Virus record (IMG/VR): IMGVR_UViG_3300031951_000003
Location: 257,140-321,139 of that record
Reading direction: 5' to 3' (one strand)
DNA: 64,000 nucleotides
Each line of letters opens with the position of its first letter. Positions within the stretch are counted from its first letter, which is position 1. The translations under genes and the position numbers were made by a program. The notes under the pieces were generated by a model. That model did not search any database. It worked only from the letters and a program-made list of their open reading frames with translations, and was not told the origin of the DNA. Shown here one piece after another: positions 7,941 to 52,636 of this stretch.

Positions 7941-7965
7941 AGGGACAAAATTTGTCCCTTTTTTT
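7941..7965 (+). terminator. Intrinsic terminator
   Basis: AGGGACA-AAATT-TGTCCCT followed by a T-run. Confidence 0.6.
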
Positions 7966-7978
7966 GTATTTATATGAT

Positions 7979-8989
7979 ATGGAAAATGAATATTCTATAC
8001 GTGGTTTCTTGGAATCATTCAATAATAATGACTTGGATGTAAAAAAATATTTTGGTGATTATGAAACATGGTTCAATGTGTTGAAGAAAAGAGGTTTGAT
8101 GGGTGAAATCGACCCGAAGAATGCTGCGGGTTCCGAAGATTGGCAAAATGAATATCTTTTGTGGTTATACGATAATGATAGAGAAAAATATTACAAATGG
8201 ATGAATGAGATTTTATCTGATGTTGTAATAGAAGGTAAAGATGTTTATTGGCAAGGTGACAGAGTTGATTTAGCAATTTTATTTTGTGATGATAGAAGAG
8301 ACGGTCCGAGTAGAGATACAATTGAAAGTATTTTAGTTGGTGAGGATGTTTTCGAACCTTATTGGGACACAACCGATGATGTTTACAGAGATGTCATTGA
8401 AGAACTAACCAAAGAGAATTTAGAAATTTTTAAAGAAAGGATTGTTAAAGAATTATCAGGTCAACAGTTGAGTCCTGATACGGAAGAAATGGAGTTAATA
8501 GCCACTGAGCAAGGACATGAAAATTATTGGACTATAGATTCAGAAAATGTGACGAGAATAATCGACGATGAGGAGTCCATGAATAGTTTACTAAAAGATG
8601 AGCTTGCCGATGTAAAATCTGATTTATACTCTGTTCATTCTAATTCATATAATTCTGCTTACGAAAGTGAGGTATATAATAGCATTTTCAATAAATTGGA
8701 TGAATATTTCAACACCGAAAAAAAACAATGGATAAATGTTCCCCACCCATACAAAAAAGAAACTGTGGTTGAAAAATTCAAAATACCAATATATGATTTC
8801 GAAGGTATCGTGAATGATTTTTTACATTCTAACAAAGGTTATGGAAATTCAGGAACACTTGATTACCATGGAAGTTTTATAGAAATAATTAGGGAAGAAA
8901 AGGATTGTCTCAGATTGTGGTTTCCTGATTACCCTGACTCAAGATTGCTTGACAAAAACATAAATGAAATATTTTCTGATTATTTTTAA
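7979..8989 (+). CDS. Acidic hypothetical protein
   Basis: Start moved to MENEY, directly after GTATTTATA; D/E-rich. Confidence 0.65.
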   Translation: MENEYSIRGFLESFNNNDLDVKKYFGDYETWFNVLKKRGLMGEIDPKNAAGSEDWQNEYLLWLYDNDREKYYKWMNEILSDVVIEGKDVYWQGDRVDLAILFCDDRRDGPSRDTIESILVGEDVFEPYWDTTDDVYRDVIEELTKENLEIFKERIVKELSGQQLSPDTEEMELIATEQGHENYWTIDSENVTRIIDDEESMNSLLKDELADVKSDLYSVHSNSYNSAYESEVYNSIFNKLDEYFNTEKKQWINVPHPYKKETVVEKFKIPIYDFEGIVNDFLHSNKGYGNSGTLDYHGSFIEIIREEKDCLRLWFPDYPDSRLLDKNINEIFSDYF

Positions 8990-9771
8990 TGGCTTACGTA
9001 AAATACATATTAGTTGAACAAAGAGGCTTTACTCCAAGAAAAACTCCTCCACCAAACATCAAAAATATTTTATCCCAAATAGAACTTTTCGAGATGTATC
9101 CAAAGATTTTTGCTCTTGTCATCAAAGACGACAAATTAAGAGCAAGAGTTTTTATGAGGTATCAGGAGTTTTATGAGTCAGATTCCGAGACATTTAGAGG
9201 AAAAGGTTTCAAATGGTATGACTACGTGAAACATTACAAGAAAAAGACCAAGAAAGATTATTTCTCTTATCATGAAGATTGGGCAGGTTATAATATCCCT
9301 TGTAACTCAATTGAATCTTGTATGAAAGTTATTCCAGACGTAAATTTTTATGATTTGATAATGTTTAGTGTAATAGATACGATTAGAACGTTAGTAGGTG
9401 GAGAGGATTTCTATTTAATTGGTATTGACCAAAGTAATGGTGAAGACCCTTCACTTATTTTTCACGAAGTAGCACATGGTCTTTGGTTTTCATCTCCAAT
9501 TTATAAGAACAAACAAATGAAAAACATAGAAAGACTCGAGCCAAATGTAAGAGAATCGGTAGCAAGAAAAATAACTGGTATGGGATATGGAGAAAATGTG
9601 GTAGATGATGAGATTCAAGCCTATTTATCTACAGGGATAGGAGATAACATGACAAGAATCAAAAACATCAAACAAGCTCAATTACCTTTCAAACAAGTAT
9701 TTGATTCTTATACAGGTAAAATCAAACCTAATAAAATAAACATAGATTGGAGGACTGATTTGAATGCCTAA
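8989..9771 (+). CDS. Putative zincin metallopeptidase
   Basis: LIFHEVAHGL (HExxH) plus downstream DEIQAY. Confidence 0.55.
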   Translation: MAYVKYILVEQRGFTPRKTPPPNIKNILSQIELFEMYPKIFALVIKDDKLRARVFMRYQEFYESDSETFRGKGFKWYDYVKHYKKKTKKDYFSYHEDWAGYNIPCNSIESCMKVIPDVNFYDLIMFSVIDTIRTLVGGEDFYLIGIDQSNGEDPSLIFHEVAHGLWFSSPIYKNKQMKNIERLEPNVRESVARKITGMGYGENVVDDEIQAYLSTGIGDNMTRIKNIKQAQLPFKQVFDSYTGKIKPNKINIDWRTDLNA

Positions 9772-10615
9772 ATTCATCAACATATTATCCGATATTTTAT
9801 CTGAAGCTAAAAGATATAAATTCACACCTGAATTACTACAAAAAATTAATTCGGTCGTAGAAAACCTTTGGAATGACCGAAACAAAAATTACGGTAATAA
9901 GAAAGAGGTTGTTGATGTTATCCCCTTCAAAACTGCAAATGGTGTTGACGGTTTGGTAAAAGTGATTGTTAATCCAAGATTGAAATACTTGGGATTTATG
10001 GGAACTAAACCGAGTAAATCTTATGACCCCGCAGACATTTATATCGAGGTAAATCCAAAATATTACGAATCTAAGAAAAATCTTTATCTTACAATCTATC
10101 ATGAGATGATACACGCCAGTGACCCAACTCAAAGTAGTTCTTGGTCTCCAAAATATATGTTGAGCTATGATGAAAAGTCTGATGAAAAGTATTGGGGTCA
10201 TCCAATAGAATTCTTTGCGATATCAAATGAGTTCTTGGAAGGTCTTGTAAGAGAATTTGAAAGAAGAGCAAAAAGATTAAGAAAAATTGAAAACAAAGAG
10301 ATTTTGGATAAGTCTTTGAAAAATATTCTCAACTATTTTGCCAAGGGTGAGCCATTAAATAAGCTCAGTCAAGACATTCTTTTCAGAATCAATGACGAAC
10401 ACGTAGGACAAGATTCATTCAAAGTTCTTAAGAATCTGACCGCAGATATGCCCCATTTGGCGGACTTACTTCCTGAAAGAGGTGAGGAACCATATTATTT
10501 ACACTATGTCGAATTGATTAAGAAATTTAATCCTGAAATATGGAAAAAGTTCCTAAGTATGTTCTACAATACAACTTTCGAGATTAGAGACATTATCAAC
10601 AAAAACTATAAATAA
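9764..10615 (+). CDS. Putative zincin metallopeptidase
   Basis: TIYHEMIHASD (HExxH) plus downstream HPIEFFA; ILSE N-terminal motif. Confidence 0.55.
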   Translation: MPKFINILSDILSEAKRYKFTPELLQKINSVVENLWNDRNKNYGNKKEVVDVIPFKTANGVDGLVKVIVNPRLKYLGFMGTKPSKSYDPADIYIEVNPKYYESKKNLYLTIYHEMIHASDPTQSSSWSPKYMLSYDEKSDEKYWGHPIEFFAISNEFLEGLVREFERRAKRLRKIENKEILDKSLKNILNYFAKGEPLNKLSQDILFRINDEHVGQDSFKVLKNLTADMPHLADLLPERGEEPYYLHYVELIKKFNPEIWKKFLSMFYNTTFEIRDIINKNYK

Positions 10616-10644
10616 AAAAAAGGGATTTTTAAATCCCTTTTTTT
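10614..10644. terminator. Bidirectional intrinsic terminator between convergent operons
   Basis: A-run, AGGGATTT-TT-AAATCCCT, T-run. Confidence 0.75.
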
Positions 10645-12971
10645 CCGCTTGCTAACATTTCCAATTTTTCTAATTTCCTTTCATGGAAATCTAAAAGGGT
10701 GGATTGTTCTTTGATTGCCTCTAAACAAGCTGATATAATCGTTTCAAATCTTATTGATAACATTGTGGTTTCTGGGTCTTCATAAACGAGTTCAGGAAAT
10801 ACCAACTGCAACTCTTGTGCAATAAAACCTATCTGAAGTAACTCGGGTCTTTCATCATCTTTTATTAGATGGTAGGAAACACCTCTAGTCTTTAATATTT
10901 TGTCCAAACTATCTGTAATTGGTCTGATATTAGTTTTGAACCTTAAATCCGATGGTCCAGGTGCACCTGATGCACCTTGTGCCCCTGTTGGTCCTGTGCC
11001 ACCTTGTGGACCAGTTCCACCACCTCCACCTTGAGCACCTTGTGGACCTGTTCCTCCTGTTCCACCACCAGTCCCTTGAGCACCTTGATTACCCGTAGGA
11101 CCGGTTGGTCCTCCAGGACCTTGAGCACCTTGTGCACCTTGGTTTCCATTACCTTGTGATGGACCTTGGGCTCCTTGAGAACCAGTTCCACCTCCTCCAC
11201 CAGGAGGTCCTGTGTGACCTTGAGCTCCCTGTGGACCTCGGTTACCCGTTGGTCCGCCAGGACCCTGAGCACCTTGTGCTCCGCCAGGACCCTGAGCACC
11301 TTGTCCACCTTGAGAACCTTGAGCTCCTTGAGCTCCTGTTGCACCACCACCACCTTGAGAACCTTGTCCTCCCTGTGAACCTTGGGCTCCTTGGTTTCCA
11401 CCACTGCCTTGAGCTCCTTGCGCACCTTGTCCTCCTGCCGGTCCTTGTGCTCCTTGGTTACCTTTACCACCTTGAGCTCCTTGCGCACCTTGTCCTCCTG
11501 CCGGTCCTTGTGCTCCTTGGGCTCCTCCTGGGCCTTGAGCTCCTTGCGCACCTTGTCCTCCTGTTGGTCCCTGAGCTCCTTGGTTACCTTTACCACCTTG
11601 TGCTCCTTGAGCACCTTGTCCTCCTTGAGAACCTTGTGAACCTGTGGCACCTACAGGCCCCTGTGCTCCTTGTGCTCCCTGTCCACCTTGTGAACCTTGA
11701 CCACCTTTGGCACCTTGTGAACCTTGTCCTCCTTGAGCTCCTTGTCCACCTGTTGGTCCTTGTGCTCCTTGATTACCACCCGAACCTTGCGCTCCTTGAG
11801 CTCCTTGTCCACCTGTTGGTCCTGTAGCACCCTTACCACCTTGAGAACCTTGTCCTCCTTGAGCTCCTTGTCCACCTGTTGGTCCTTGAGCTCCTTGATT
11901 ACCACCCGAACCTTGCGCTCCTTGAGCTCCTTGTCCACCCTGTGAGCCTTGGGAACCTGTGGCACCCGCAGAACCTACTGGACCTTGTGCTCCTTGGCCT
12001 CCCTGCGAACCTTGTGAGCCCGTGGCCCCTTGTGCACCTACTGGCCCTTGAGCTCCCTGTCCACCTTGTGAACCTTGGGAACCTGTGGCTCCTGCTGAAC
12101 CAACGGGACCCTGAGCTCCCTGTCCACCTTGTGAACCTTGTGAACCTATGGCACCTTGTGAACCTTGTCCACCTTGAGCTCCTTGTCCTCCCTGTGAACC
12201 TTGGGAACCTGTAGCTCCTTGTGACCCAACTGGTCCTTGTGCTCCTTGACCTCCTTGTGACCCTTGGGAACCAACCGCTCCCTGAGAACCTGTGGCACCT
12301 TGAGCACCTTGACCTCCTTGTGAACCCTGAGAACCTGTAGCACCTTGTGACCCTACCGGCCCTTGAGCACCTTGTCCACCTTGTGAACCCTGAGAACCGA
12401 CCGCTCCCTGTGAACCTGTGGCACCTTGAGCACCTTGACCTCCTTGTGAACCCTGAGAACCAGTATCGCCTTGTGCACCTATTGCACCCTGAGCACCTTG
12501 ACCACCTTGTGCGCCTTGTGGACCTACAGCACCTTGGGAACCTTGTGAGCCAGTAATACCTTGAGCCCCTGTTGGACCTTGTGCTCCTTGACCCCCTTGT
12601 GAACCTTGAGCACCTTGACCACCTGTCACTCCCTGGGAACCTTGATTTCCTTGAGCACCTTGTCCCCCTTGAAAACCAATACTACCTTGAGCACCAGTTG
12701 GTTCTCTATTACCAACCCATCCTGTAGAGTTGATAAGTGTTCCTGCTGAATTTTTTAAACTAGTTGTTATCTTGAGGTTACTATTGTAAGTTACAAATGA
12801 AGGTTTATCACTTCTCCAAGCAAGATAAACAATATTACTATTATCTGTCCAATGCAAATGTAGTAGTGGTGAATCGTCTTCAAGCTTCAAATATGTTGAG
12901 GTTGAGCCAGAATCAACGAATTCGACCGTGGGAAACGCATAATCAGGATATATTATTATATTTTCAGACAC
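10629..12971 (-). CDS. Collagen-like fibre chain C with C-terminal peptidase S74 chaperone
   Basis: About 194 Gly-X-Y units (aa 93-673), then SDLRFKTNI...IGFIAQE...PELV. Confidence 0.9.
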
Positions 12972-15393
12972 TTAAATTATCTTTTAAAATTTTTATTCTC
13001 TCCATTATTGAGATTATTCTTTTCTGTTGTTCTTGAAGTGCACCAATACCCAAACTTACCATAAGACCATATTCAACTGATTTAAAGCCCTCCTCGTCTG
13101 TCCAAACAACTTCTGGGACGATATCTTCAATTTGCTGTGCAATAAAACCTATTGTTTCACCAGTAAATGCACTTGGAAGAGATATTGCACGGTTCATTGA
13201 TATTTTAGGATGGTCAACCCATTCGAATCTAACACCCTCAATACCTTTAACTTTTTCTAATACATTTGTTAAGGATTGAATATTATCTTTAAGTCTTTGG
13301 TCTGAAGGTGGACCCTGAGCTCCTTGAGCTCCTTGACCTCCTGTTGGACCAGTTCCACCCTGAGGACCTGTAGGTCCTACGTTACCTTGAGCACCTTGAC
13401 CACCTTGGCCCCCACCTGAACCTGTAGCACCTTGGGCACCTTGACCCCCTTGACCACCACCCGAGCCTTGAGCCCCTTGGGCTCCCGTAGCTCCTGGTCC
13501 TCCACCAGGCCCCACTGCTCCTTGGGCACCTTGTCCTCCTGTTCCTCCTGTAGGTCCTGTTGGTCCCTGTGCTCCTTGGAATCCTGTTGCACCTCCCCCT
13601 CCTGTTCCACCTTGAGCCCCAACAGGACCCTGAGCGCCTTGAGCTCCCTGAGCACCACCCTGTGCTCCTTGAGCACCTGTGGAACCACCTCCACCTTGGC
13701 TTCCTTGAGCACCTGTAGTTCCACCTTGAGCTCCTTGAGCACCTGTTGGTCCTTGAGCACCTTGGTTACCTTGTGCACCTTGGTTACCACCTTGAGCTCC
13801 TTGGGCTCCTTGTGAACCTTGGACACCAGGAGCACCTTGTGCACCCGTATTTCCTCCTTGGGCTCCTTGAGCTCCTTGTGAACCTTGGACACCAGGAGCA
13901 CCTTGTGCACCTGTTGAAGCTCCTTGAGCTCCCTGAGCCCCTTGAGAGCCCTGAACACCAGGAGCTCCCTGTGCTCCCGTTGAACCACCTTGAGCTCCTT
14001 GGGCTCCTTGGGCACCCTGATTACCTGTCGCACCTTGGGCACCTGTTGAACCACCTTGAGCACCCTGTGAACCTTGTGCCCCTTGTGCTCCAGTATTACC
14101 TTGAGCTCCTGTATTGGCTCCTTGTGCTCCTTGAGCACCTTGTGGTCCTTGTGCACCTTGGTTTCCTTGTGCACCTGTATTGGCTCCTTGTGCTCCTTGA
14201 GAGCCTTGAGCTCCTTGAGCACCTGTATTACCTTGAGCTCCTGTATTGGCTCCTTGTGCACCTTGAGCACCTTGTGGTCCTTGTGCACCTTGGTTTCCTT
14301 GTGCACCTGTTGAAGCACCCTGTGCACCTTGCGCTCCCTGTCCTCCTTGTGAGCCTTGACCACCTTGAGCACCTGTTGTTCCTCCTTGGGCTCCTTGTGC
14401 TCCTGTTCCACCTTGAGCTCCTTGACCTCCTTGTGCCCCCGTGGTTCCCCCTTGGGCTCCTTGAGCACCCTGTCCTCCTTGTGAACCTTGAGCTCCTTGG
14501 GCTCCTGTTGTTCCTCCTTGTGCTCCTTGAGAACCTTGTGCACCTTGTGCTCCAGTTGAACCCTGAGCACCTGTTGTTCCTCCTTGAGCTCCTTGAGCTC
14601 CTTGTCCTCCTTGTGCCCCCTGTGCACCCTGAGCACCTGTTGTTCCTCCTTGGGCTCCTTGTGCACCTTGTCCTCCTTGGGCTCCTTGTGCACCCTGAGC
14701 ACCTGTATTAGCTCCCTGAGCTCCTTGTGAACCCTGTCCTCCTTGTGCTCCTTGAGCTCCTTGAGCACCAATTGTTCCACCTTGAGCACCTTGAGCACCT
14801 TGTCCTCCTTGTGCACCTTGTGAACCCTGAGCACCTGTGTTAGCTCCTTGAGCACCTTGAGCTCCTTGACCACCTTGAGCTCCTTGACCACCTTGAGCTC
14901 CCGTATCCGCTCCTTGAGCTCCCTGTGCTCCCTGTCCACCCGTAGCACCTTGAGCTCCTTGAGGTCCTATCGAACCTTGTGAACCTTGAGCACCTACATT
15001 TCCTATTGCTCCCTTAGCACCTTGAGAACCTTGCGCTCCTTGAGCACCTATTGACCCCTGAGAGCCTGTAGTTCCTGAAGCACCTTGTGCTCCTTGAGCA
15101 CCGGTAAATCCAGATATACCCTCAGCAGGTCCTACCCATTCGCCAACTTCATTAATCATTTCTATACCACCCACATACAATCCATATATTCCTCCGGTGA
15201 CCTTTGCACCATCAACGAGTAATTCAGCTCCGATAGTTGCTATGTTACTTTTTGTTGTTGATGAAACTTGGATATTTCCAGAACCATTAACAGATAATTG
15301 TATTTTGTCCGCGGATGAAATCCCTTCAAATTCCATATGAGGGTTAGGGTTTCCACCACTTTTACCATTGGGATATATTATAACGTCAGACAT
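12964..15393 (-). CDS. Collagen-like fibre chain B with periodic insertions and S74 chaperone
   Basis: 195 Gly units (aa 92-696), including 20 four-residue units, then SDQRLKDNI...IGFIAQQ...PEVV. Confidence 0.9.
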
Positions 15394-18017
15394 TAATTAA
15401 GAAGGTTTTCAAGTTCATTTATTTGTTTTTCGATATCTGATATAAATACTTGTTGCTCTTTAATACCTTCAATCAAAACGGCGTTCATTCTATTATATTC
15501 AACAGTATAAAAACCATCAGAACCGATTTTAACTACTGTCGGGAAAAATTCTTTAACATTTTGAGCTATCAGACCAATCGAGTGAAGCTTGTTATTGTTT
15601 AATCTTTTAATGTAATCGCTTTTCGTCAACTTTTCATTCCAATCGTATTCTACGACTCTAAGTTCAAGAATTTTTTCAAGTGTATTATCAAGTGATTTAA
15701 CATTATATTTGACTCTTCTATCAGAGCAGCTGCCCCCGTATGTAAAATAACCATTGAAGTTAGTAGAACCATAATACAAATATGTAACACCAATCGTAAT
15801 TGAACCATAGGTCCACTGAAATGTTGAGTTTTGACAAGTTGTAACATCTGAAGCGAGTTGGATGCTAAAATTTGCTTGCCAGTTAATATCTTGGGAATAA
15901 ACTGTTCTGTTTTGACATGCCCCCGCGTTTACACAAATGGCGTAATAAGAATCACCACATAGATTCTGAACAAAACAAGAGGTGAACGAGCCAGGTCCTG
16001 TTGCACCTTGTGCACCTTGGGCTCCTTGTCCTCCCGTAGGACCCGTAGGACCCGTAGGACCACCCGACCCTTGTGCACCTTGGTTACCCGTAGGACCAGT
16101 AGGACCACCTGGTCCTTGTGCACCTTGGTTACCTTGAGGTCCTGTTACACCTGGTGCACCTTGAGCACCTTGACCTCCGTTTGGACCTTTCGGTCCAGCA
16201 GCTCCTTGCGCCCCTTGGCTACCCGTAGCACCCCCACCACCTTGAGGACCTTGAGCACCTTGAGCACCCTGACCTCCTGTTCCACCTTGTGGTCCTGGAG
16301 CACCTTGAGCACCTTGATTTCCTGTTGCTCCTTGTGCACCTGGATGACCTGTAGCACCCTTACCACCCTGTGAACCCTGAGCACCTGTTGCTCCCTGAGG
16401 ACCAATTGCACCTGTATTACCCCCTGCACCTTGTGCACCTTGTGGTCCTGTGGCACCTTGTGCTCCTGGATGTCCTGTTCCTCCACCAGAACCTGTTGGA
16501 CCTTGTGGTCCTGTGGCTCCCTGTGCTCCTGGATGTCCTGTTCCTCCACCTGAACCTTGAGGACCTTGTGGTCCTGTGGCTCCTTGTGCTCCTGGATGTC
16601 CTGTTCCTCCACCCGAACCTGTTGGACCTTGTGGTCCTGTGGCTCCTTGTGCTCCTGTATGACCAACGGCACCTTGAGCACCTTGAGGTCCTGTTGGTCC
16701 TGTTGCTCCTTGAGCTCCTGGATGTCCTGTGGCTCCTTGAGCACCCGTCGAACCTGCATTACCTGTAGCACCTTGAGCACCAGGGTGACCTGTGTTTCCT
16801 GTTGGCCCCTGTGCACCTTGTGGTCCTGTAGCACCTTGAGCACCCGCATGACCCGTCGCACCTTGTGCCCCAGTAGAACCAGCATTCCCCGTAGCACCTT
16901 GTGCACCTGGATGACCTGTATTTCCTGTTGGTCCCTGTGCTCCTTGTGGTCCTGTAGCACCCTGAGCACCAGCATGACCCGTCGCACCTTGTGGTCCTTG
17001 AGCCCCTTGAGGACCTGTAGCACCTTGAGGTCCTACTGCACCTGTAGAACCTGTAGGTCCTTGTGCACCTGTATTACCTGTGGCTCCTTGTGGGCCAACA
17101 TTTCCTTGTGCTCCTGTATTACCTTGTGCTCCTGTGTTACCTGTGGCTCCTTGTGGTCCTACGTTACCTGTAGCCCCGGTAGCTCCCTGAGCCCCTGTGT
17201 TACCTGTGGCCCCTTGTGGTCCAACATTTCCTTGTGCTCCTGTATTACCTTGTGCTCCTGTATTACCTGTGGCCCCTTGTGGACCAACATTTCCTTGTGC
17301 TCCTGTATTACCTTGTGCTCCTGTGTTACCTGTAGCTCCTTGAGCACCTGTATGACCCTGTGCACCTGTATTTCCTTGTGCTCCTGTATTACCTGTGGCC
17401 CCTTGTGGTCCAACATTTCCTTGAGCTCCCGTGTTACCTTGCGCTCCTGTGTTACCTGTGGCTCCTTGTGCACCTGTATTACCCTGTGCACCTGTATTTC
17501 CTTGTGCACCGGTATTTCCCGTGGCTCCTTGTGCACCTGTATTACCCTGTGCACCCTGGGTTGTGCCTTTAGCACCCTGTGCCCCTTGGGGTCCAACCTG
17601 ACCTTGTGCACCTGTATCACCTTGTGCACCTTGTATTCCTTGTAACCCTTGTGCACCCAAATTTCCCTGTGCACCCGTATCACCCTGTGCACCTGTATTG
17701 CCCTGCGCACCTTGGTGACCCTGAGCCCCTTGAGCTCCTGCAATACCTGTGGTTGGTCCAATCCAATCCAAAGTTCCATCAATTACTTGAACTGAGTCAA
17801 TAGCAAAATAATCAGAAACATTAAGCGTTACAACACCAATTGTTTGGCTAGAACGGTCAATAACTAATTGATTAGTAACTGATGCTGAGCTAAGATTAAT
17901 CTTACCCGTTGGCACAACTCTCCAAACACTTGTTCCACTGTTAACCCAATTTATATAAGGGACTCTGTCTGGTGTTCTAGAAATGGAATTACTCGGAACT
18001 ATTAAAATATCACCCAT
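15393..18017 (-). CDS. Collagen-like fibre chain A with Cys/aromatic tip domain and S74 chaperone
   Basis: 195 Gly units (aa 91-676), an 88-aa tip, then SDRRVKYNV...IGLIAQN...PTVV. Confidence 0.9.
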
Positions 18018-18117: not shown

Positions 18118-18831
18118 ATGACATTAAAAAAAATAGGTAGCAAATCTTACGTTGTAAACTTACTTTCAGACTACATTCTTTCTGAGATATCAACTGAAGA
18201 GAACTCAATAATAAAAGTAATCGACTGTGGTAATTTTTTTGTTATCAAAGGAAAAACCACTTCAAAAGAAGTTTTATTTTTACCAAACATAATTTCTAAA
18301 TTTAATGAGAGATTCGAAATACCCTCTAAACTCACCCATACAATTGACTTAATTGAATATGATTCTGATTTACCTGATGTAAAGTCAATTTCCCACACAT
18401 ACCACAGTAATACCTCCAACTGTTCATATAATCAAACCGAAATCGAAAAAAATGAGATTTCCGAAGAAACTGATGAATTAGTATACGTTTCTTCATTTCC
18501 CCACGGTTATTCCCTAACTCAGGGTAGATTACTTTATTATTATGGGAAAAAAATATTCTACAACATTCCATCCAATTACCTTGTCACGAGTTTGGAATTT
18601 CATCTAACAAATGAGAGAAATGATGAAAATGAATTTGGATTCAGCGTTTACGATGGATTTTACAAAACAAAGGATGAAGTGCTTCGTTCTGCGGTCTTAG
18701 ATATATTTGATTTCAATATGGAGCCAATCGCCAAAGAAATAAAAAAAGTGGATTGGAGTATCGAACTCACAGACCCACTTTACGAATATGATTTTTTGAA
18801 AGAAAAGGTTGAGGGATTTATTATTATATAA
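18118..18831 (+). CDS. Degenerate S-adenosylmethionine synthetase-like protein
   Basis: VNLLSDYIL...FVIKGKTTS resembles MetK CDQISDAIL...VVAGEITT; the canonical catalytic motifs are not seen. Confidence 0.35.
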   Translation: MTLKKIGSKSYVVNLLSDYILSEISTEENSIIKVIDCGNFFVIKGKTTSKEVLFLPNIISKFNERFEIPSKLTHTIDLIEYDSDLPDVKSISHTYHSNTSNCSYNQTEIEKNEISEETDELVYVSSFPHGYSLTQGRLLYYYGKKIFYNIPSNYLVTSLEFHLTNERNDENEFGFSVYDGFYKTKDEVLRSAVLDIFDFNMEPIAKEIKKVDWSIELTDPLYEYDFLKEKVEGFIII

Positions 18832-19123
18832 TACCTAATTTTTTTCTGTGTCCTTGTATAATTTGAATTGCCTCAGTTAATTCATTATAATTTCTTTCTG
18901 GAGCATATAAATGAGGTTCATAATCTTTATCGTCACCTTCGATAATCATCAAAGCTGGAACCATGTCATTTTCCGTCACTTCAGAATACATATTATATTC
19001 TTTGGAATACTCATCGATGTCTCGTTCAAAGAAGTCTATGTTTTCGGTTCTCAACATTTTTTTGAATTCATCACAATGAGGACATCCTTTCATTGTGTAT
19101 ACTATAACGTTTAAATTTTTCAT
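18824..19123 (-). CDS. Glutaredoxin
   Basis: VYTMKGCPHC and VPAL. Confidence 0.85.
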   Translation of the reverse strand: MKNLNVIVYTMKGCPHCDEFKKMLRTENIDFFERDIDEYSKEYNMYSEVTENDMVPALMIIEGDDKDYEPHLYAPERNYNELTEAIQIIQGHRKKLGII

Positions 19124-19124
19124 T

Positions 19125-19448
19125 TTAATCTAAAAGATTTAATACTTCGGGTGCAGTCATGACACCAGGTTTAGAAAACACCTCTTTACCTTCTTTAAAT
19201 ATTTTAATTGTTGGAACACTTCTGATTTGAAGTTCGTTTACGACATACTCTCTATCGGAATCAATATCCAACTTATAGATTGAATACTTGGGTGAACTTG
19301 TTGACTCACTAATCAGGGATTCGTTCACCTTTTCGAGATTGTATAACATTATTTTACAAGGTCCGCACCATGTTGCAAACAAATCCAATACAAAATTTTC
19401 TCCGTTGTTAATTTTTTGTTTAAGTTGTTCCGTTGTTATCTGTTCCAT
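19125..19448 (-). CDS. Thioredoxin
   Basis: FATWCGPCK and IRSVPT. Confidence 0.9.
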   Translation of the reverse strand: MEQITTEQLKQKINNGENFVLDLFATWCGPCKIMLYNLEKVNESLISESTSSPKYSIYKLDIDSDREYVVNELQIRSVPTIKIFKEGKEVFSKPGVMTAPEVLNLLD

Positions 19449-45924: not shown

Positions 45925-48168
45925 TTAAAAATCTAATTTCACTACGTATTGTTGAATACCTTGTCTCAATTCGGGAGACTGTAGCTTAGATATAACAATA
46001 AGGTCTTTATTGGAATCGTAAAGACCAATTTCGGTAACATATGAAGTAGTTCCACTTGTCCATGTTGGGTTAGAAGTGTTAGTGAATTGATTTCTTCCCA
46101 AATTTATCAAGTATCTCATCTCATATATTGTTGCCGAAATATCTGTTGTGAAATTACCATAGAAGTAATACTCATCACCAAAATTCAAATAATCTGTTTG
46201 ATTGTTTGTTGGAATGTCTATGTAAGAGGCGAGGTTATATATATCACTGTTTGTAACTGCACTTTGATACGTTGCCAAATCTATTTGGAATGTTGTGCCT
46301 GTCAATCCTGACATTGTAATATATCCATTAACCGATGAACCAGATATTTGGTCTGTAACATCAATGTATTTCCAATCAGTTGGACTTGGTCTAGTGTCAC
46401 CTGAAACCATTTGACAAAGAATCATCAATGAGTTTGCACAATATCCTGTCAGATTAATAGCCGTAGAAGAAGGTGAAGGTTGATTCAAAAATTGAAACTC
46501 TGGTCCGAATCTGACAGCAACATTTTGACTTGTGTCTGTGCAACCTGTTGAAGGTCCAACAATTTTCGAATAATAATTACAGTGTAATGAATCAGTAAAT
46601 CCTGTATTGTTGAATCTATAGGTTACCCAAAGTGTTTGTGTATCAGCAGTAAGTAAACCTGTGGCGGTTGAGTTGTTCGTGAAACAAGTATTAGGTGCCA
46701 AATAAGAAAGTTTAGGTGCTGATAGAGTCCAGTTTCTATTAGCCTTATAAGACATAGCCGCTATTACCTCCTCATCGTCAATTACAATGGTCTGTGAATC
46801 AGGGAAAACCTTGCCAATTCTATTCAAATTACCATTACTATCAGGATTTGTATCCCAAAGATGATAATAACGAATACCAGGGTCGTTCATATCAATGTTT
46901 TTGGTTGATTTGATATAGTATGGTTTACATAAATCATAACCTGGTGGGTCGATAAAGAATGTTTGACCAATTGTGTTTCCTGTCGACTTATGCCACATCA
47001 AAGTAGGTATTGTAACCTTAAGGTGTCTCGCTAAACCTGTTTGATTCGAAGGGTTCTGTGGGTCATAAGGAATAGTTGAAAACTTCTCGCCATAAACATG
47101 GTCAATATCTTGATTAGTGTAGTGTATGATTGCAATTGCTTTTTGGTCTTGGGGTCTAACAACTACTTTCTCATCAAACGAATTGTAATAAAAAACTTGA
47201 CTTGTATCGGTTTGACCTGAAGGCTCTTGATATCCCAAATATTCTTTAGTCCCGATGTAAGTTACTGAACCGTATTTTGTATAATCTTCATAAGCGTTAC
47301 TGAAAAGACCAGCAGGACTTTCTGACCAAGGAATATTCATGTTCCAAATTAAAGTATTTTCACGGTTTGAAACATCACATGGTGATTCAAAATTAATAGT
47401 GTCAGTCTGCCAATAAGGTGCTGGTGTTATGAAATCATAAAGAACAGTCATACCTGAAGGATATATCAGAACTCTTGCATATTCTCCTGATAATGAAAAA
47501 GAACTTAAATCTGGAACACTTCTATCTAAGGTAAGTGTCCATGGAGTTGTTCCAGAGGTTCCTGTTGAAGGGCTTATGTTTTGAATTTTATATGTGAAAA
47601 CAGGATAGTTACCTACAAAACCTGTAAGTCCTACTCCGAGTATTAATGTAACAAAATCACCTATTGAGGGTGTTCCTGATGATGGCTCGAGTGTAAGTGG
47701 GTTTGTATCTAATTCGATGTCTATCGTTGTTTGACCTGTGAGCGTATCTTGTGCAACCCAATAGTTAGAAGTTATTGTATATGCAGATGAAGTTTGTGCC
47801 GTCCAACTACCTTGAGTTCCTCCCGTCATGAAAAATCCTTTTTCACCAGCAGAATTATAAACTTCTTGAAATGTAGAATCCATGTAAGGTATTCCGTATG
47901 TGTTACCGATACCACCCTGAACATAGTAAGGATATTTCACATTTTCTTTGTTGGACTGAGGGGAACCTGTGTCATTTTGAGCATTGAAATCAGGCATCAA
48001 AATGTTATTATTAGTTTGATTATAGTTAGGAACGGCCTGATAATTAACTTCACTATCCCCTATTTGGAAATAAGAAATGTTGAAATTCCCTTGTGATATC
48101 TTTCTACGACCAACGTCAGTTAATCTTGTGTTAATTAGACCCGAAGTATTTTTAATTATATAAGCCAT
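45925..48168 (-). CDS. Putative baseplate/tail structural protein
   Basis: N-terminal TRLTDVGRRKI..G...YFQIGDSE and C-terminal VTEIGLYD...LIVISKL resemble baseplate/fibre-attachment proteins. Confidence 0.55.
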   Translation of the reverse strand: MAYIIKNTSGLINTRLTDVGRRKISQGNFNISYFQIGDSEVNYQAVPNYNQTNNNILMPDFNAQNDTGSPQSNKENVKYPYYVQGGIGNTYGIPYMDSTFQEVYNSAGEKGFFMTGGTQGSWTAQTSSAYTITSNYWVAQDTLTGQTTIDIELDTNPLTLEPSSGTPSIGDFVTLILGVGLTGFVGNYPVFTYKIQNISPSTGTSGTTPWTLTLDRSVPDLSSFSLSGEYARVLIYPSGMTVLYDFITPAPYWQTDTINFESPCDVSNRENTLIWNMNIPWSESPAGLFSNAYEDYTKYGSVTYIGTKEYLGYQEPSGQTDTSQVFYYNSFDEKVVVRPQDQKAIAIIHYTNQDIDHVYGEKFSTIPYDPQNPSNQTGLARHLKVTIPTLMWHKSTGNTIGQTFFIDPPGYDLCKPYYIKSTKNIDMNDPGIRYYHLWDTNPDSNGNLNRIGKVFPDSQTIVIDDEEVIAAMSYKANRNWTLSAPKLSYLAPNTCFTNNSTATGLLTADTQTLWVTYRFNNTGFTDSLHCNYYSKIVGPSTGCTDTSQNVAVRFGPEFQFLNQPSPSSTAINLTGYCANSLMILCQMVSGDTRPSPTDWKYIDVTDQISGSSVNGYITMSGLTGTTFQIDLATYQSAVTNSDIYNLASYIDIPTNNQTDYLNFGDEYYFYGNFTTDISATIYEMRYLINLGRNQFTNTSNPTWTSGTTSYVTEIGLYDSNKDLIVISKLQSPELRQGIQQYVVKLDF

Positions 48169-48198
48169 TACGAATAAATATTTGTCATCCTTTTTTTA

Positions 48199-51048
48199 TT
48201 AATCCTGTGCACATTTACAGCTCGCGTTTGAACATTGTTTTGATGAACAAGAGATAAGAGAATTATCTACGCTGTCAATACAATAAGCAACTATTGTTGG
48301 GTCAGGTCCTGGACTTCCTGAAACGTTGTCTATCATATTACCCGAAGAATTTCCACTTGTTATTGTTACGGTTTTATAAAATACCCCATAGTTACTCGTC
48401 TCAATCTGAATCGAAAAACTAGTATCAATTGTCACAATGTTTTGCGTAGTAATTACTATGTCCACTGCGGGTTCACCCAAATTAGTAGTTGGTGTCACAA
48501 TCAAACTTGTCACAGGATTACAAACAATACTTCCACCATCACTATTATAAACCATCTTGAACACATCACCTGCAACAAGATTAATCGGGTTATACATAAC
48601 AACACTAACACTTTCATTTATTCCCGCAGAACAGAATCCGTTGAAAATACCCGAGCCAACTTCAACGTCATTCAGCATTGCTTTAACCTCAACATAATAA
48701 TTGTCGCTTGTTGGTGTTTGGAAGTTTGCCTGCATGTATTGAACATTATTATTTGGGGATATACCACACGGATATGTGGATAGTCCTGAATCAATTGTAA
48801 GAACACCACCAGTAGGGCTATATCTGAAATTTTGGAAACAACCCACCTTATTTGGTCCTGAACAAATTAATCCTCCAACTAATTGATTCATGTTGAGATA
48901 AATGTTACCACTTTGAATAACACCTTGACATGTTACACATTCAGGTGTATCAACCTGACCTTGATAGGTGATTGAGTTGTTATTCACCTGTGTTTTTTCT
49001 GTATCACCTACCGCTGAACAACAAGTGCATCCTTTGATGACTACATCAGAAACTTGAAAAGAAATTGTCTGTTGTAGATTAGTTGTGCAGTTGGACTGAG
49101 CTCCAACTTGACCATCGGTTATTGTTAATATCGAAGTAGTAGAACCTGAAACAGTGCTAAAATTTGAGAGTTCCAACGAATATTGGTCAGTCTCAGTATC
49201 AATTCTTTGTGTCTCGGGATTACAGTTTGGTCTACTTCCAATAACAGTATCTATGTCTGTGGAGAAAGGTGTCTTTGTTGAACCATTTTGTAGAATAGTA
49301 AAGTTGTCTACACAAGTTCCTGTTCCTGGTCCATTGAATGTCTTGATAGATGATGTTGTCAAATTGAAATTAACCACAACTCCATTAGGTATAGGCGGAA
49401 CCGAAGTAACATAAAAATATGTTGTTTTCGTTGAAATATTATTTGAAGATACCTCAGTGTTTAATTGTGGTTGTGTTATAATATTAATTTGATATGTTTG
49501 TGGACTTCCCACTGAACTTATTTGAACCGATTGATTAACTATATTATTCGCGGCATCTATAACTCTAATATTGTATGTGTTCGGGCAAAGATTTGTAAAA
49601 ATATTTGAGGTTTGATATGATACCCCGTTATTAATCGAATATTGATATGGTGCTAATCCAAATCTCGCACTAACCGTTATTGAACCATCACAGTTCGTTT
49701 GGTTGTTGCAAGACGCATCTTGTTTTGTTGTTGTCACTTGAAGTGGTATTATTGTAGGACAAGAACCTAAAGTTACATTTATAGTATAAGTTTGTGTTCC
49801 ACCAAGTAAACTCCAACCACCTAAAGGTGGTAATGAAGTGGTTGAGGACGCAAAAATACCTCCCCCCACAGGGTTTATTGGTGTTATCAAATCTGAACCA
49901 ACAAGTTCCCATCTTGTTCCTTTCCACACAATGTTCTGTGAATTACTACTTGTCCATCTTGGTTTACCATTAGACGTTCCATTTTGACTGAACGTTGTTG
50001 GTCCTACAACGTTAGAATTGTTGTATGCCAAGAAACAAATGTTGGCGTAAACTGGTGGAGGTGTTGTGGATGGCGTTACAGTTGGGGATGGAGTTGGACT
50101 TGCTGTCGGTAAAAGTATGGAGCAAACTGTGTTTGCAGTATAGTCACCGTAATAATCAACAACGGTAACAGGATAATAACCAGGTCCTATGTTAGTTAAA
50201 GTTCTTGTTCTTTGACCATTTGCCCAATAAATTGAATACGGACTTGTTCCTCCTGTGATGTTCAAAGTGAGAATCCCATCATATGATTCTGAGTTTGAAG
50301 GCATTTTGAGAAGATTACAATTCACACCCAAATCGAAAAGGGTAAACGGTTCACAATTGTTTTTCGGACGATAAACTGGTGTTGGGTTAGGTGTTGGTGT
50401 TTGACTTGGTGTTACATTTGGTGTCAGACTTGGCGTTTGAGTAGGGGTCGGTGTAGTTGTGAGAGTAGTTGTTGGTGAGGCTGTTTGTGTTGGTGTTGGG
50501 GTCAGGCACGCTGTGGTTGCAGGCTCGTTCAATAAAACTACACCACTATAAACTTGAGTATAATCTAACGAAACAAGGACTTCAAAACTTTCACCTTTTT
50601 GGAAATTACCACAACAATCTGTATACCAAAATATTCCAGTTGTATAAGCACTTCCACACACTATTGGGGTGGATGATGGGGTCTGCGTTGGTGTAGGGGT
50701 ATTAGTGGGAGTTTTGGTAGGGGTCGGTGTTTGGGTTGGAGTTTTAGTTTGCGTAATAGTTTGTGTTGGTGTTGGTGGTGGGGTTTGAGATTGGGTTGGC
50801 GGGGGGGTTTGAGTCGGTGTTTGTGTAGGGGTTTGGCTCGAAGAAGGAATAGGGGGCGTGGGACAAGCACCGAGAACTGTGAGTATTATGAACTCACCTG
50901 GAGCTTGACCTGGCACAGTATAGGAACAAACAGTTATTGTGCCGCTCGGTGGAATTGTAGGAATAGGATTCAATTCACAGTCAAACCCTATAGGAGTTGC
51001 AGGTAAAATTGCGGACCCATTTGTTATTTGATAGTTAATACAAGCCAT
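48199..51048 (-). CDS. Pro/Thr-repeat, Cys-rich virion protein with SprB repeats
   Basis: TPTQTP linkers, and two SprB-like units (DGILTLNITGGTSPY...TVVD; DGSITVSA..G.APYQYS...VID). Confidence 0.7.
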   Translation of the reverse strand: MACINYQITNGSAILPATPIGFDCELNPIPTIPPSGTITVCSYTVPGQAPGEFIILTVLGACPTPPIPSSSQTPTQTPTQTPPPTQSQTPPPTPTQTITQTKTPTQTPTPTKTPTNTPTPTQTPSSTPIVCGSAYTTGIFWYTDCCGNFQKGESFEVLVSLDYTQVYSGVVLLNEPATTACLTPTPTQTASPTTTLTTTPTPTQTPSLTPNVTPSQTPTPNPTPVYRPKNNCEPFTLFDLGVNCNLLKMPSNSESYDGILTLNITGGTSPYSIYWANGQRTRTLTNIGPGYYPVTVVDYYGDYTANTVCSILLPTASPTPSPTVTPSTTPPPVYANICFLAYNNSNVVGPTTFSQNGTSNGKPRWTSSNSQNIVWKGTRWELVGSDLITPINPVGGGIFASSTTSLPPLGGWSLLGGTQTYTINVTLGSCPTIIPLQVTTTKQDASCNNQTNCDGSITVSARFGLAPYQYSINNGVSYQTSNIFTNLCPNTYNIRVIDAANNIVNQSVQISSVGSPQTYQINIITQPQLNTEVSSNNISTKTTYFYVTSVPPIPNGVVVNFNLTTSSIKTFNGPGTGTCVDNFTILQNGSTKTPFSTDIDTVIGSRPNCNPETQRIDTETDQYSLELSNFSTVSGSTTSILTITDGQVGAQSNCTTNLQQTISFQVSDVVIKGCTCCSAVGDTEKTQVNNNSITYQGQVDTPECVTCQGVIQSGNIYLNMNQLVGGLICSGPNKVGCFQNFRYSPTGGVLTIDSGLSTYPCGISPNNNVQYMQANFQTPTSDNYYVEVKAMLNDVEVGSGIFNGFCSAGINESVSVVMYNPINLVAGDVFKMVYNSDGGSIVCNPVTSLIVTPTTNLGEPAVDIVITTQNIVTIDTSFSIQIETSNYGVFYKTVTITSGNSSGNMIDNVSGSPGPDPTIVAYCIDSVDNSLISCSSKQCSNASCKCAQD

Positions 51049-51079
51049 TAATTTATAATTATCTTTTCCATTTTTTTAT

Positions 51080-52420
51080 TTATGAACATCCACCACAATC
51101 TACGCTATCAGTGCAAATAGTTACACTACTACAAGGTTGAATTGATGTAACCCCACCTGAAAAATCACCCGACCCAGCTCGGATGCACCTTTCGACTTTT
51201 GAACCTGCAGAAAGTGGTTCACCAACTACTGAACCATCACATAAAGTATATTGTATTGTTGAACCCACAACATCTTGATTTTCAAAGTAATAACACAAAC
51301 ATGGACAAACATAAGTTCCACAAGAGCTTATATCATCGAAATTAGTTATTGCCACTACAACACCATTTAAGATTTCCATAACATAAAGTGGTGGTGACGA
51401 TATATCAGGATTTGCTGGATACGTAGATGGTCCGTATACATATTTTCCTGTAAGAGTTGTGTTTACAAAAAATATTCCAAAAAGATTATAATATAATTGA
51501 CTGCCAGGTCCTAAAGTAGTTGAAGAATTGTAATAATACCCTGCGTTTCCATCTACCTCAACTAATGGGTCGAAAGCTTCTATAAAATCACATTTCACTT
51601 CTTCTTTTGTTTTTGATGTCCAATTTATTTCTGACCCACATATAGTTGCCCCATATGATAAAAGAAACTCAACAAATGAAGGTGTAACCGTTGGCGTTTG
51701 TGAAGGGGTTTCTGTTTGGGTAGGAGTTTGAGGAGGTGTTTCAGATTGGGTAGGAGTTTGGGTTTGGGATGGAGTTTGAGTTTGTGTTGGTGTCGATGGA
51801 ACACAAAGTGAAAAAGATACTATTTTACCTTGGGAATCAATTACCACTTGATATAATGTTCCTCCGAAAGAAATGATATATGTGTTCCCACCCCCATTCA
51901 AAGGGTTATATAATACCCCGTTTAGAAGTGTTTGGTAAATTGTGGCACCTACAACAGGGACTAAATTTGCCTCTGAAATGTATGTATAATAACCTGTTAG
52001 ATTGAGTGGTGATGAACAACTATCAGCTGTCGGGTGAAAAACAACAAGAGGTGTTGCGGTTGGTGTTGATGATATAGTTGCTGTATTCGAGGTAGTGGGT
52101 GAATTTGTTGGTGTCATGGATGGCGTTTGGGTTGGTGACAAGGTAGGTGAATACGACGGGGTTGGTGTCATGGTTGGGGTTTTAGTGACATTTGGTGTTG
52201 GTGTGGGAGTTATATCTATAGGAATCTCATCAATACAACCTTGGGTATCTTCAATTTTAATAACAATTGTTGATTCACTATATGGTGATGGGACATAGAA
52301 TGAGAATGGAAATGTTGCAACCGACGCAACAAATTGACAGTCGCCACCACCCGAGTTACAATAATATATGTCAACTGGTGTATTTGCAGTTACAGATTGG
52401 ATAGTTACAAATTGACTCAT
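51080..52420 (-). CDS. Pro/Thr-repeat Cys-rich virion protein
   Basis: Start moved to MSQFVTIQ; PT linkers between Cys-containing domains. Confidence 0.7.
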   Translation of the reverse strand: MSQFVTIQSVTANTPVDIYYCNSGGGDCQFVASVATFPFSFYVPSPYSESTIVIKIEDTQGCIDEIPIDITPTPTPNVTKTPTMTPTPSYSPTLSPTQTPSMTPTNSPTTSNTATISSTPTATPLVVFHPTADSCSSPLNLTGYYTYISEANLVPVVGATIYQTLLNGVLYNPLNGGGNTYIISFGGTLYQVVIDSQGKIVSFSLCVPSTPTQTQTPSQTQTPTQSETPPQTPTQTETPSQTPTVTPSFVEFLLSYGATICGSEINWTSKTKEEVKCDFIEAFDPLVEVDGNAGYYYNSSTTLGPGSQLYYNLFGIFFVNTTLTGKYVYGPSTYPANPDISSPPLYVMEILNGVVVAITNFDDISSCGTYVCPCLCYYFENQDVVGSTIQYTLCDGSVVGEPLSAGSKVERCIRAGSGDFSGGVTSIQPCSSVTICTDSVDCGGCS

Positions 52421-52635: not shown

Positions 52636-52636
52636 C

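What the first reader, a model, noticed from the sequence alone, without database searches (positions are those of the whole stretch)
15393..15990. Only one of three fibre chains has a tip domain; S74 may act like a procollagen C-propeptide
In chains B and C the S74 cleavage Ser follows the last Gly-Pro directly ([17 protein letters not shown]), so autocleavage would leave bare collagen ends. Chain A has an 88-aa Cys/Tyr-rich domain (5-6 Cys, SFTSCF...YGGSC) before SDRRVK. Homotrimers of B or C would have no receptor-binding tip. The layout fits one asymmetric tip per heterotrimer, with three different S74 domains selecting chains, nucleating folding and then being cleaved.
Basis: partly seen in the sequence, partly recalled or inferred. 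Interest (0 to 1): 0.6.

Follow-up and report, generated by a model that had tools for sequence, protein, structure and literature searches.

The report
Three-chain collagen fibre of jumbo phage
Three neighbouring genes of an uncultured freshwater jumbo phage most likely build one collagen-like fibre from three different chains, which would be the first natural mixed-chain collagen known outside animals.

Summary
Three adjacent minus-strand genes (A 15393-18017, B 12964-15393, C 10629-12971) each encode a ~90-aa N-domain, ~195 Gly-X-Y triplets and a C-terminal Peptidase_S74 domain. Only A carries an 88-aa, 6-Cys tip.

- Nineteen related viral contigs carry the trio, each with exactly one A-, one B- and one C-type S74.
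- Helix length ranges from 98 to 314 triplets between genomes. It is matched within a genome, often exactly (195/195/194, 118/118/117, 269/269/270), in 16 of 19.
- The collagen DNAs of A, B and C are only ~65% alike, so gene conversion does not explain the match.
- A and C share a 21-residue period. B has 22, one extra residue per seven triplets.
- The S74 C-terminal helix forms the central coiled coil in solved relatives. It is acidic in A (-3.6), basic in B (+2.8) and near neutral in C, against +0.1 ± 1.1 in 133 other S74 domains.
- The genes overlap (TAATG; 8 nt), which suggests coupled translation.
- The tip is hypervariable.

Nothing was tested physically. Three genomes have mismatched lengths, and one trio has no tip. 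Confidence is about 0.7.

The parts
15393..18017 (-). Chain A gene (874 aa): N-domain, collagen, tip, S74. Its TAA stop overlaps the ATG of chain B by one base (TAATG).
17748..18017 (-). Chain A N-terminal domain (aa 1-90), all-beta. It is paralogous to the N-domains of B and C (..I[IL]I.P ... W[IV]G motif) and is the presumed virion anchor.
15990..17747 (-). Chain A collagen region (aa 91-676): 195 triplets, one +1 interruption, 21-residue (63/126-nt) repeat period.
15726..15989 (-). Chain A tip (aa 677-764): 88 aa, 6 Cys, 9 Tyr. It is hypervariable among orthologues, with three invariant Cys (first, middle, last). It has no homologue or fold match outside this family.
15396..15725 (-). Chain A S74 intramolecular-chaperone domain (aa 765-874), SDRRVK cleavage motif, acidic C-terminal helix (net -3).
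12964..15393 (-). Chain B gene (809 aa): N-domain, collagen, S74, no tip. Its last 8 nt overlap the GTG start of chain C.
13306..15120 (-). Chain B collagen region (aa 92-696): 195 triplets plus 20 single-residue insertions (G-x-x-T type), 19 of them spaced exactly 22 residues apart (66-nt repeat).
12967..13305 (-). Chain B S74 domain (aa 697-809), GPP|SDQRLK junction, basic C-terminal helix (net +3).
10629..12971 (-). Chain C gene (780 aa, GTG start): N-domain, collagen, S74, no tip.
10953..12695 (-). Chain C collagen region (aa 93-673): about 194 triplets, one in-frame break, 21-residue (63-nt) repeat period.
10632..10952 (-). Chain C S74 domain (aa 674-780), GP|SDLRFK junction, near-neutral C-terminal helix (net +1).

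Best explanation
Chains A, B and C are the three different strands of one collagen-like fibre (an A:B:C heterotrimer, about 167 nm long in this phage) of an uncultured 321-kb freshwater jumbo phage.

Proposed mechanism:
1. The three overlapping genes are translated together in roughly equal amounts (inferred).
2. The three paralogous S74 domains associate through their C-terminal helices into one mixed coiled coil. An acidic A helix, a basic B helix and a near-neutral C helix favour the mixed trimer and disfavour A3 and B3 (pattern shown, effect inferred).
3. This sets chain choice and register at the C-terminal end. The triple helix then zips towards the N-terminus, as in procollagen (inferred from the families).
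4. Both ends are held by three-chain globular parts, the three paralogous N-domains and the S74 trimer. The three helices must therefore hold the same number of triplets, and this is what the genomes show.
5. Chain B carries one extra residue about every seven triplets, which must bulge out of the helix (shown in sequence, structure inferred).
6. Each S74 domain cuts itself off at the conserved Ser (Ser-Lys dyad present, cleavage inferred). This leaves B and C with bare collagen ends and A with a single small, disulfide-rich, hypervariable tip, the likely host-binding part (inferred).
For: Conserved, complete trio. Nineteen distinct contigs (window plus L004, L011-L022, L085, L087, L088, L167, L179) each carry exactly one A-, one B- and one C-type S74. 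The types form three clean clades. Incomplete sets were seen only at contig ends.

Length co-variation.
- Register-corrected triplet counts A/B/C include 98/98/98, 118/118/117, 161/161/160, 195/195/194 (window), 221/222/219, 269/269/270, 304/302/304 and 314/314/316.
- Pearson r is 0.991-0.997 over 18 genomes. The mean within-genome range is 8.6 triplets against 115 when shuffled, and none of 100,000 shuffles reached the observed value.
- Close relatives L011 and L012 differ by about 30-40 triplets in all three chains together.
- This is not gene conversion. The collagen DNAs of A, B and C are 64-66% alike, their longest shared word is 24 nt, and each has its own repeat unit.

Period co-variation. 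A and C have a 21-residue period and B a 22-residue period in most genomes. In L087 the periods are 39/41/39.

S74 helix charge. A is -3.6 ± 1.05 (n = 16), B is +2.8 ± 0.98 (n = 20) and C is +0.6 ± 1.2 (n = 22). In 133 other S74 domains it is +0.14 ± 1.14 (Mann-Whitney p about 1e-11 for A and for B). The per-genome sum is near 0. This helix is the central parallel coiled coil and the main trimerisation force in solved relatives (PMC8326128, PMC4690869).

Complex prediction of the three S74 domains. ipSAE is 0.80 against a best control of 0.16. The mark was reached by 58 of 80 solved complexes and 2 of 110 mismatched pairs. The runs agree in at least 95% of contacts and the partner pLDDT is at least 83. 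The lowest-error contacts lie in the C-terminal helices.

Other points.
- The genes overlap: TAATG and 8 nt.
- In L013 the N-domain types are permuted relative to collagen plus S74, yet the full set and the length match are kept.
- Globular insertions occur in one chain type only.
- Tip hypervariability: pairs with 86-87% S74 identity have 28-33% tip identity.
- Chain-specific interruptions are known in natural heterotrimeric collagens (PMC11923368).
Against: - No physical measurement exists.
- Every solved S74 relative is a homotrimer (PMC4690869, PMC8326128), and a review describes prokaryotic collagen-like proteins as homotrimers (PMC8968730).
- The complex prediction would probably also pass for homotrimers, since paralogues of a family with solved trimers can score from memory.
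- Three of 19 genomes are mismatched by 14-70 triplets: L004 122/150/148, L016 131/160/145, L179 at least 316/345/274. This may reflect collapsed repeats in short-read assemblies, but that was not shown.
- Twenty single-residue bulges in one strand of a triple helix have no solved precedent.
- Pro content is low (3-8%) and the sequences are nearly uncharged, so helix stability is unproven.
- The trio of L021 has no tip at all.
Confidence: 0.7

Rival explanations
1. Three separate homotrimeric fibres (A3 with a trimeric tip; B3 and C3 as tipless whiskers). They are paralogues kept at equal length because they work side by side, for example as a tripod or a uniform brush, or because they share a binding partner at both ends.
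For: All solved S74 domains and all characterised prokaryotic collagens are homotrimers (PMC4690869, PMC8326128, PMC8968730). Single collagen-S74 genes exist in other viral contigs, for example L047 and L051. B's periodic interruptions are easiest to accommodate when all three strands carry them at the same level. Three genomes show unequal lengths.
Against: - It does not explain why triplet counts agree to within 0-2 units over a 98-314 range.
- It does not explain why the match holds for triplets rather than residues. B is longer by exactly its number of insertions.
- It does not explain why the sequence periods co-vary.
- A3 would stack helices of net charge about -4 and B3 helices of about +3, values outside the range of 133 other S74 domains.
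- No genome has lost or duplicated a single member.
Confidence: 0.18
2. Another mixed assembly: a different stoichiometry (such as A with two of another chain), or three homotrimers bundled laterally into a nine-chain rope. B and C ends might be capped by a separate tip protein encoded elsewhere.
For: The neighbour gene at 7952-8989 is conserved next to the trio in all 16 relatives checked and has no known function. The tipless trio L021 shows that binding need not reside in the A tip.
Against: Helix charges sum to about zero only for A+B+C. The overlapping genes suggest equal amounts. There is no positive evidence for a cap protein.
Confidence: 0.1

Closest known systems
Phage and virus fibre or spike proteins with a C-terminal Peptidase_S74 intramolecular chaperone (K1F endosialidase, T5 pb1, GA-1 neck appendage, S16 gp37; also collagen-plus-S74 fusions in polinton-like viruses and phages)
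   Same: The domain is the same (Pfam above cut-off). The S-x4-K dyad is at the junction, and the C-terminal helix is modelled as a central coiled coil. The domain sits at the far C-terminus of a trimeric fibre and is expected to be cut off. Collagen directly fused to S74 is already on record (PMC12220804).
   Different: All described cases are homotrimers of one gene product. Here three diverged paralogues with complementary helix charges are always inherited together and appear to form one mixed trimer.
Procollagen C-propeptide and other non-collagenous trimerisation domains of animal collagens (e.g. NC2 of collagen IX)
   Same: It works alike. A C-terminal globular domain selects chains, sets the register, starts C-to-N zipping, and (for the C-propeptide) is then removed.
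   Different: There is no sequence relationship (no Pfam hit other than S74). Removal is autocatalytic rather than by a separate protease. The helix has no hydroxyproline and almost no charged residues.
Complement C1q (A, B, C chains from three clustered genes)
   Same: Three paralogous clustered genes give one heterotrimeric collagen stalk. Interruptions are chain-specific (from general knowledge of C1q; natural heterotrimers with unequal interruptions are described in PMC11923368).
   Different: In C1q every chain has a globular gC1q head and there is one kink. Here only one chain has a tip, one chain has 10-45 periodic one-residue insertions, and there is no gC1q domain.
Heterotrimeric tail fibre of virophage DSLV2 (three consecutive gp37-like genes; PMC12724248)
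   Same: Three consecutive paralogous genes form one 1:1:1 fibre. This is a precedent that viral fibres can be heterotrimers.
   Different: That fibre is a short (about 16 nm) gp37-like beta structure with no collagen and no S74 domain.

Membership tests
Peptidase_S74 / intramolecular chaperone auto-cleavage domain (PF13884) | Sequence match to the family profile above the curated cut-off | tested here: met
   A 52.3, B 48.8 and C 60 bits against a cut-off of 22. A profile of the six domains finds the solved relatives 6f45, 7dc3, 8jov and 3gud.
Peptidase_S74 / intramolecular chaperone auto-cleavage domain (PF13884) | Ser-Lys catalytic dyad (Ser at the cleavage site, Lys five residues later) | tested here: met
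   The S, D, R and K of S-D-x-R-x-K are invariant within each of the three 14-sequence alignments of A-, B- and C-type domains. The dyad is as described in PMC8326128.
Peptidase_S74 / intramolecular chaperone auto-cleavage domain (PF13884) | C-terminal helix forming the central three-stranded coiled coil | tested here: met
   The lowest-error contacts of the predicted A:B:C complex lie between the C-terminal helices (A 84-98, B 83-104, C 73-94). This is a prediction only.
Peptidase_S74 / intramolecular chaperone auto-cleavage domain (PF13884) | Assembly as a homotrimer, as in every solved member | tested here: inconclusive
   Helix charges, the always-complete trio and the length matching point to a mixed trimer instead. 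No physical test was possible.
Peptidase_S74 / intramolecular chaperone auto-cleavage domain (PF13884) | Autocatalytic release after folding | not testable with these tools
   This needs expression with Ser-to-Ala controls.
Collagen triple-helix repeat (PF01391) | Long uninterrupted Gly-X-Y runs matching the family profile | tested here: met
   A 243, B 115 and C 136 bits against a cut-off of 27.2. There are 195/195/193 triplets.
Collagen triple-helix repeat (PF01391) | Formation of a triple helix | not testable with these tools
   This needs circular dichroism, melting or trypsin resistance of expressed protein. Pro is only 3-8% of residues.
Fibrillar collagen C-propeptide (functional analogue only) | Homology to the animal C-propeptide domain | tested here: not met
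   Pfam finds only Collagen and Peptidase_S74 in the three proteins. The resemblance is functional, not one of descent.
C1q family | Globular gC1q head after the collagen region | tested here: not met
   The tip has no Pfam hit, and neither structure search returned a significant match of any kind (best Z 4.3). B and C have no head at all.

The most novel reading that the evidence does not exclude
This is a natural, hydroxyproline-free A:B:C heterotrimeric collagen. Its chain choice and register are set by a self-removing heterotrimer of S74 chaperone domains with acid, base and neutral helices. One strand carries an extra residue once per seven triplets, which is one turn of the collagen superhelix in the 7/2 model. 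That would place a row of bulges along one face of a fibre 80-270 nm long. It would be the first mixed-chain collagen outside animals and the first heteromeric S74 domain.
Probability: 0.6. Interest if true: 0.85.

Novelty: new variant of a known kind. Interest (0 to 1): 0.8.

Why it matters
Prokaryotic and viral collagens are treated as homotrimers (PMC8968730). Making register-defined heterotrimeric collagen in bacteria is a recognised difficulty for both collagen research and biomaterials (same review). A natural three-gene cassette that encodes chain selection, register and a leaving group in about 110 residues per chain would give that field a ready-made tool.

It would also extend the S74 chaperone family from homo- to hetero-oligomers. 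In addition it would show how a phage can place a single, asymmetric, fast-evolving binding tip on a three-stranded fibre. The length and period co-variation offers a sequence-only way to detect heterotrimeric collagens in metagenomes. The phage is widespread in lake metagenomes (at least 15 studies), so the fibre is ecologically relevant.

Tried and rejected
- Initial objection. I first took B's 20 one-residue insertions, absent from A and C, as evidence against a shared helix. I dropped this when the relatives showed that B's length minus its insertions equals that of A and C, and because natural heterotrimers with unequal interruptions are on record (PMC11923368).
- Gene conversion as the cause of equal lengths: rejected.
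- Cultured relatives: megablast of the region and tblastn of a conserved neighbour against 50,697 phage records found nothing. The best S74 hits there are generic cyanophage tail fibres at 41% identity or less.
- Tip homologues: an exhaustive search of 1.84 billion representatives gave only two repetitive adhesin-like proteins, whose scores are sums of many short weak matches. They are not homologues.
- Fold searches: the tip (pLDDT 74) and the N-domain (pLDDT 81) gave nothing significant. Foldseek E-values were 0.68 or worse and the best VIA Z was 4.3. The N-domain was folded as a monomer, which may be meaningless for an intertwined trimer.
- Family scans: Pfam and PHROGs on neighbours, insertions and domains gave nothing informative.
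- Complex prediction: it passed but cannot separate hetero- from homotrimers. Only one job was allowed, so A3, B3 and C3 were not run.
- Reads: Logan contigs of four lake runs break inside the repeats, so repeat number could not be checked. Only the unique stretch 14872-16460 was confirmed identical.
- Alignment of interruptions or insertions between chains, and a one-residue stagger at the collagen-S74 junctions, showed no consistent pattern.
Full report
What is there. The window is the right-hand 64 kb of a 321,139-bp viral record. It has about 33% G+C, against 46-54% in the three collagen genes. Three adjacent minus-strand genes encode A (15393-18017, 874 aa), B (12964-15393, 809 aa) and C (10629-12971, 780 aa). 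Each has an N-terminal domain of about 90 aa, a Gly-X-Y region and a C-terminal Peptidase_S74 domain, all above Pfam's cut-offs. These are the only three S74 domains in the genome. The stop of A and the start of B overlap as TAATG. The GTG start of C lies 8 nt inside B.

A has an 88-aa tip with 6 Cys and 9 Tyr between its last triplet and SDRRVK. In B and C the collagen runs straight into the S74 serine.

Anatomy of the helices. A has 195 triplets and one +1 interruption, and C has about 194 triplets. B has 195 triplets plus 20 single extra residues (G-x-x-T type), 19 of them exactly 22 residues apart. The DNA repeat units are 63/126 nt in A, 66 nt in B and 63 nt in C. I first read B's insertions as an argument against a shared helix. 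The relatives reversed that view.

Relatives. A word search with the tip plus S74 of A found an 881-aa protein on a 6.8-kb metagenome contig (L004). That contig carries the same three genes in the same order with the same overlaps. Three scans of IMG/VR with the A-, B- and C-type S74 alignments raised the total to 19 distinct contigs with the trio. S74 domains fall into three clean clades, and every contig that reaches far enough has exactly one of each. Partial sets occur only at contig ends. The flanking genes are syntenic, so these are members of one group of jumbo phages. No cultured relative is in the phage collection. The phage itself is found at 89% or more of sampled words in lake and freshwater metagenomes of at least 15 studies.

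Length co-variation. Between genomes the helix ranges from 98 to 314 triplets. Within a genome the three chains match. Counted in triplets, with every register shift discounted, the A/B/C values are:
- 98/98/97.7
- 118/118/116.7
- 142/140/136.7
- 153/154/151
- 153/154/148
- 161/161/159.7
- 166.7/167/166
- 174/170/176.7
- 195/195/193.7 (window)
- 214/216/214.7
- 221/222/218.7
- 269/269/269.7
- 304/296/300.7
- 304/302/304
- 305/300/300.7
- 314/314/315.7

On the simpler regex counts, correlations are 0.991-0.997 and no shuffle out of 100,000 reaches the observed within-genome agreement. Related genomes are not independent, but about ten distinct length classes are represented. The close relatives L011 and L012 differ by 30-40 triplets in all three chains at once.

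The match holds for triplets rather than residues, because B is longer than A and C by its number of insertions. Gene conversion does not explain it. The three collagen DNAs are 64-66% identical and their longest shared word is 24 nt. Six independent IMG/VR records of this phage are identical over 18.3 kb including the trio, so the window's own repeat numbers are reproducible. Three genomes do not fit: L004 at 122/150/148, L016 at 131/160/145 and L179 at 316 or more/345/274. Collapsed repeats in short-read assembly are a plausible cause, but I could not test this.

Period co-variation. In most genomes A and C have a 21-residue sequence period and B a 22-residue period. In L087 all three change together to 39/41/39. 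Seven triplets is one turn of each strand's superhelix in the 7/2 collagen model (general knowledge). On that model B's extra residues would line up along one face of the rod. This last point is inference only.

The S74 domains. In solved relatives the C-terminal helix forms the central parallel coiled coil. It is the main trimerisation force in MyRF (PMC8326128) and the proposed starting point of folding in T5 pb1, where inter-helix salt bridges fix the register (PMC4690869). In the trio this helix has the following net charges:
- A-type: -3.6 ± 1.05 (n = 16)
- B-type: +2.8 ± 0.98 (n = 20)
- C-type: +0.6 ± 1.2 (n = 22)
- 133 other S74 domains from the same set of loci: +0.14 ± 1.14, range -2 to +4

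The per-genome sum is near zero. An acidic, a basic and a neutral helix is the classical design of a heterospecific coiled coil. A3 or B3 would pile up like charges.

The A:B:C complex of the three domains was predicted with ipSAE 0.80 against a best control of 0.16. The mark was reached by 58 of 80 solved complexes and 2 of 110 mismatched pairs. The runs agree in at least 95% of contacts and the partner pLDDT is at least 83. The best-defined contacts are in the C-terminal helices. Because homotrimers of this family are solved, the pass shows likeness to them. It does not show that the mixed form is preferred.

Other pointers. In L013 the N-domain types are permuted relative to collagen plus S74 (A-type N on the B-type chain, C-type N on the A-type chain, B-type N on the C-type chain). 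Even so, one of each N-type and one of each S74-type remain, and lengths still match at 221/222/219. Large globular insertions (221 aa; a second of about 105 aa in L011) occur only in the chain that bears the A-type N-domain. A single-copy side domain fits a three-different-chain fibre more easily than a break in all three strands at one level.

The tip. AlphaFold2 folds it as a compact alpha/beta domain (pLDDT 74). There is no significant fold match, no Pfam family and no true homologue among 1.84 billion representatives. Across 17 orthologues only three Cys are invariant: the first, directly after the collagen, one in the middle, and the last, directly before the S74 serine. A bridge between the first and last Cys would bring the tip's ends together, as needed for a domain inserted between one strand's collagen end and its S74. 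This is inference. The tip is far more variable than the adjoining S74. Mean pairwise identity is 20% against 56%, and pairs with 86-87% S74 identity have only 28-33% tip identity. That is the behaviour of a receptor-binding part. Within this phage's population the tip is invariant in four lake runs from four different studies. The trio of L021 has no tip on any chain, so the fibre can function without one.

Mechanism proposed. Coupled translation gives equal amounts of the three chains. The S74 helices select one of each chain and set the register. The helix zips C-to-N, as described for collagens in PMC11923368. The three N-domains close the other end, which is why triplet numbers must match. 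The S74 domains cut themselves off. The mature fibre is a rod of about 167 nm with periodic bulges from B and one tip on A. The following are shown: the gene layout, the domain content, the conservation, the length and period co-variation, the charge pattern and the tip variability. The following are inferred: the assembly state, the folding direction, the cleavage, the disulfides, the attachment site and host binding.

Comparison and novelty. Collagen fused to S74 is known (PMC12220804), and S74 as a folding and leaving domain is well known. A heterotrimeric viral fibre from three consecutive paralogues has one recent precedent without collagen or S74 (PMC12724248). Prokaryotic collagens are described as homotrimers (PMC8968730). 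A mixed-chain collagen with a mixed S74 trimer is therefore a new variant of a known kind, supported so far only by sequence evidence.

I put the heterotrimer at about 0.7. Three equal-length homotrimers stand at about 0.18, and other mixed or bundled assemblies at about 0.1.

Noticed in passing
window 62627-64000 (-) together with G000:C1:1-5420: A fourth, very large collagen-like gene runs across the ends of the record. It is made of (Gly-Thr-Ser / Gly-Ser-Ser)n, with an open frame of 1806 aa plus the 457 aa seen in the window. It ends in a C-terminal domain of about 150 aa that is not S74 and has no Pfam match. The record's 344-bp 'direct terminal repeat' lies inside these repeats, so it may be an assembly overlap rather than a true genome end.
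   Followed up: partly
window 18824-19448 (-): A glutaredoxin-like gene (CPHC) and a thioredoxin gene (WCGPC) lie on the same strand upstream of chain A, separated from it only by the small plus-strand gene 18118-18831. They are conserved there in 13 of 16 relatives, including the tipless L021. A role in handling the Cys-rich tip is possible but untested.
   Followed up: partly
window 7952-10615 (+): Two proteins with HExxH metalloprotease-like motifs (8989-9771, 9764-10615) converge on chain C in 5-6 relatives. The gene 7952-8989 is conserved next to the trio in all 16 relatives and has no Pfam or PHROG match. It is a candidate partner or assembly factor of the fibre.
   Followed up: partly
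window 57283-61907 (+): There is a glycosyltransferase family 9-like gene and a 1229-aa fusion of an FkbM methyltransferase with GT1 and GT9 domains. They might glycosylate the Thr-rich collagen, including the extra Thr of chain B. This was not tested.
   Followed up: no
L004:107-2752, L011:6262-9330, L013:3108-6512: In these relatives a globular domain of about 221 aa with no Pfam match is inserted after 5-8 triplets, only in the chain that bears the A-type N-domain. L011 has a second insert of about 105 aa further along.
   Followed up: partly
L013:3108-11917: The N-domain types are cyclically permuted relative to the collagen-plus-S74 parts. This implies recombination at the conserved W[IV]G junction between the three genes.
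   Followed up: yes
window 45925-56938 (-): A run of very large genes (747, 949, 456 and 1433 aa) is mostly without family matches. One has SprB repeats, which hints at a Bacteroidota host. Two share phrog_15511.
   Followed up: no
window 10900-17800, both strands: Many long ORFs in other frames overlap the three collagen genes, up to 523 aa. They are by-products of the repetitive, G+C-rich Gly-X-Y coding and are not genes.
   Followed up: yes
window 12964-18017: The phage is held at 89% or more of sampled words in lake and freshwater metagenomes of at least 15 studies (2017-2025), and also in runs labelled 'fungus metagenome'. No RNA run holds it.
   Followed up: partly
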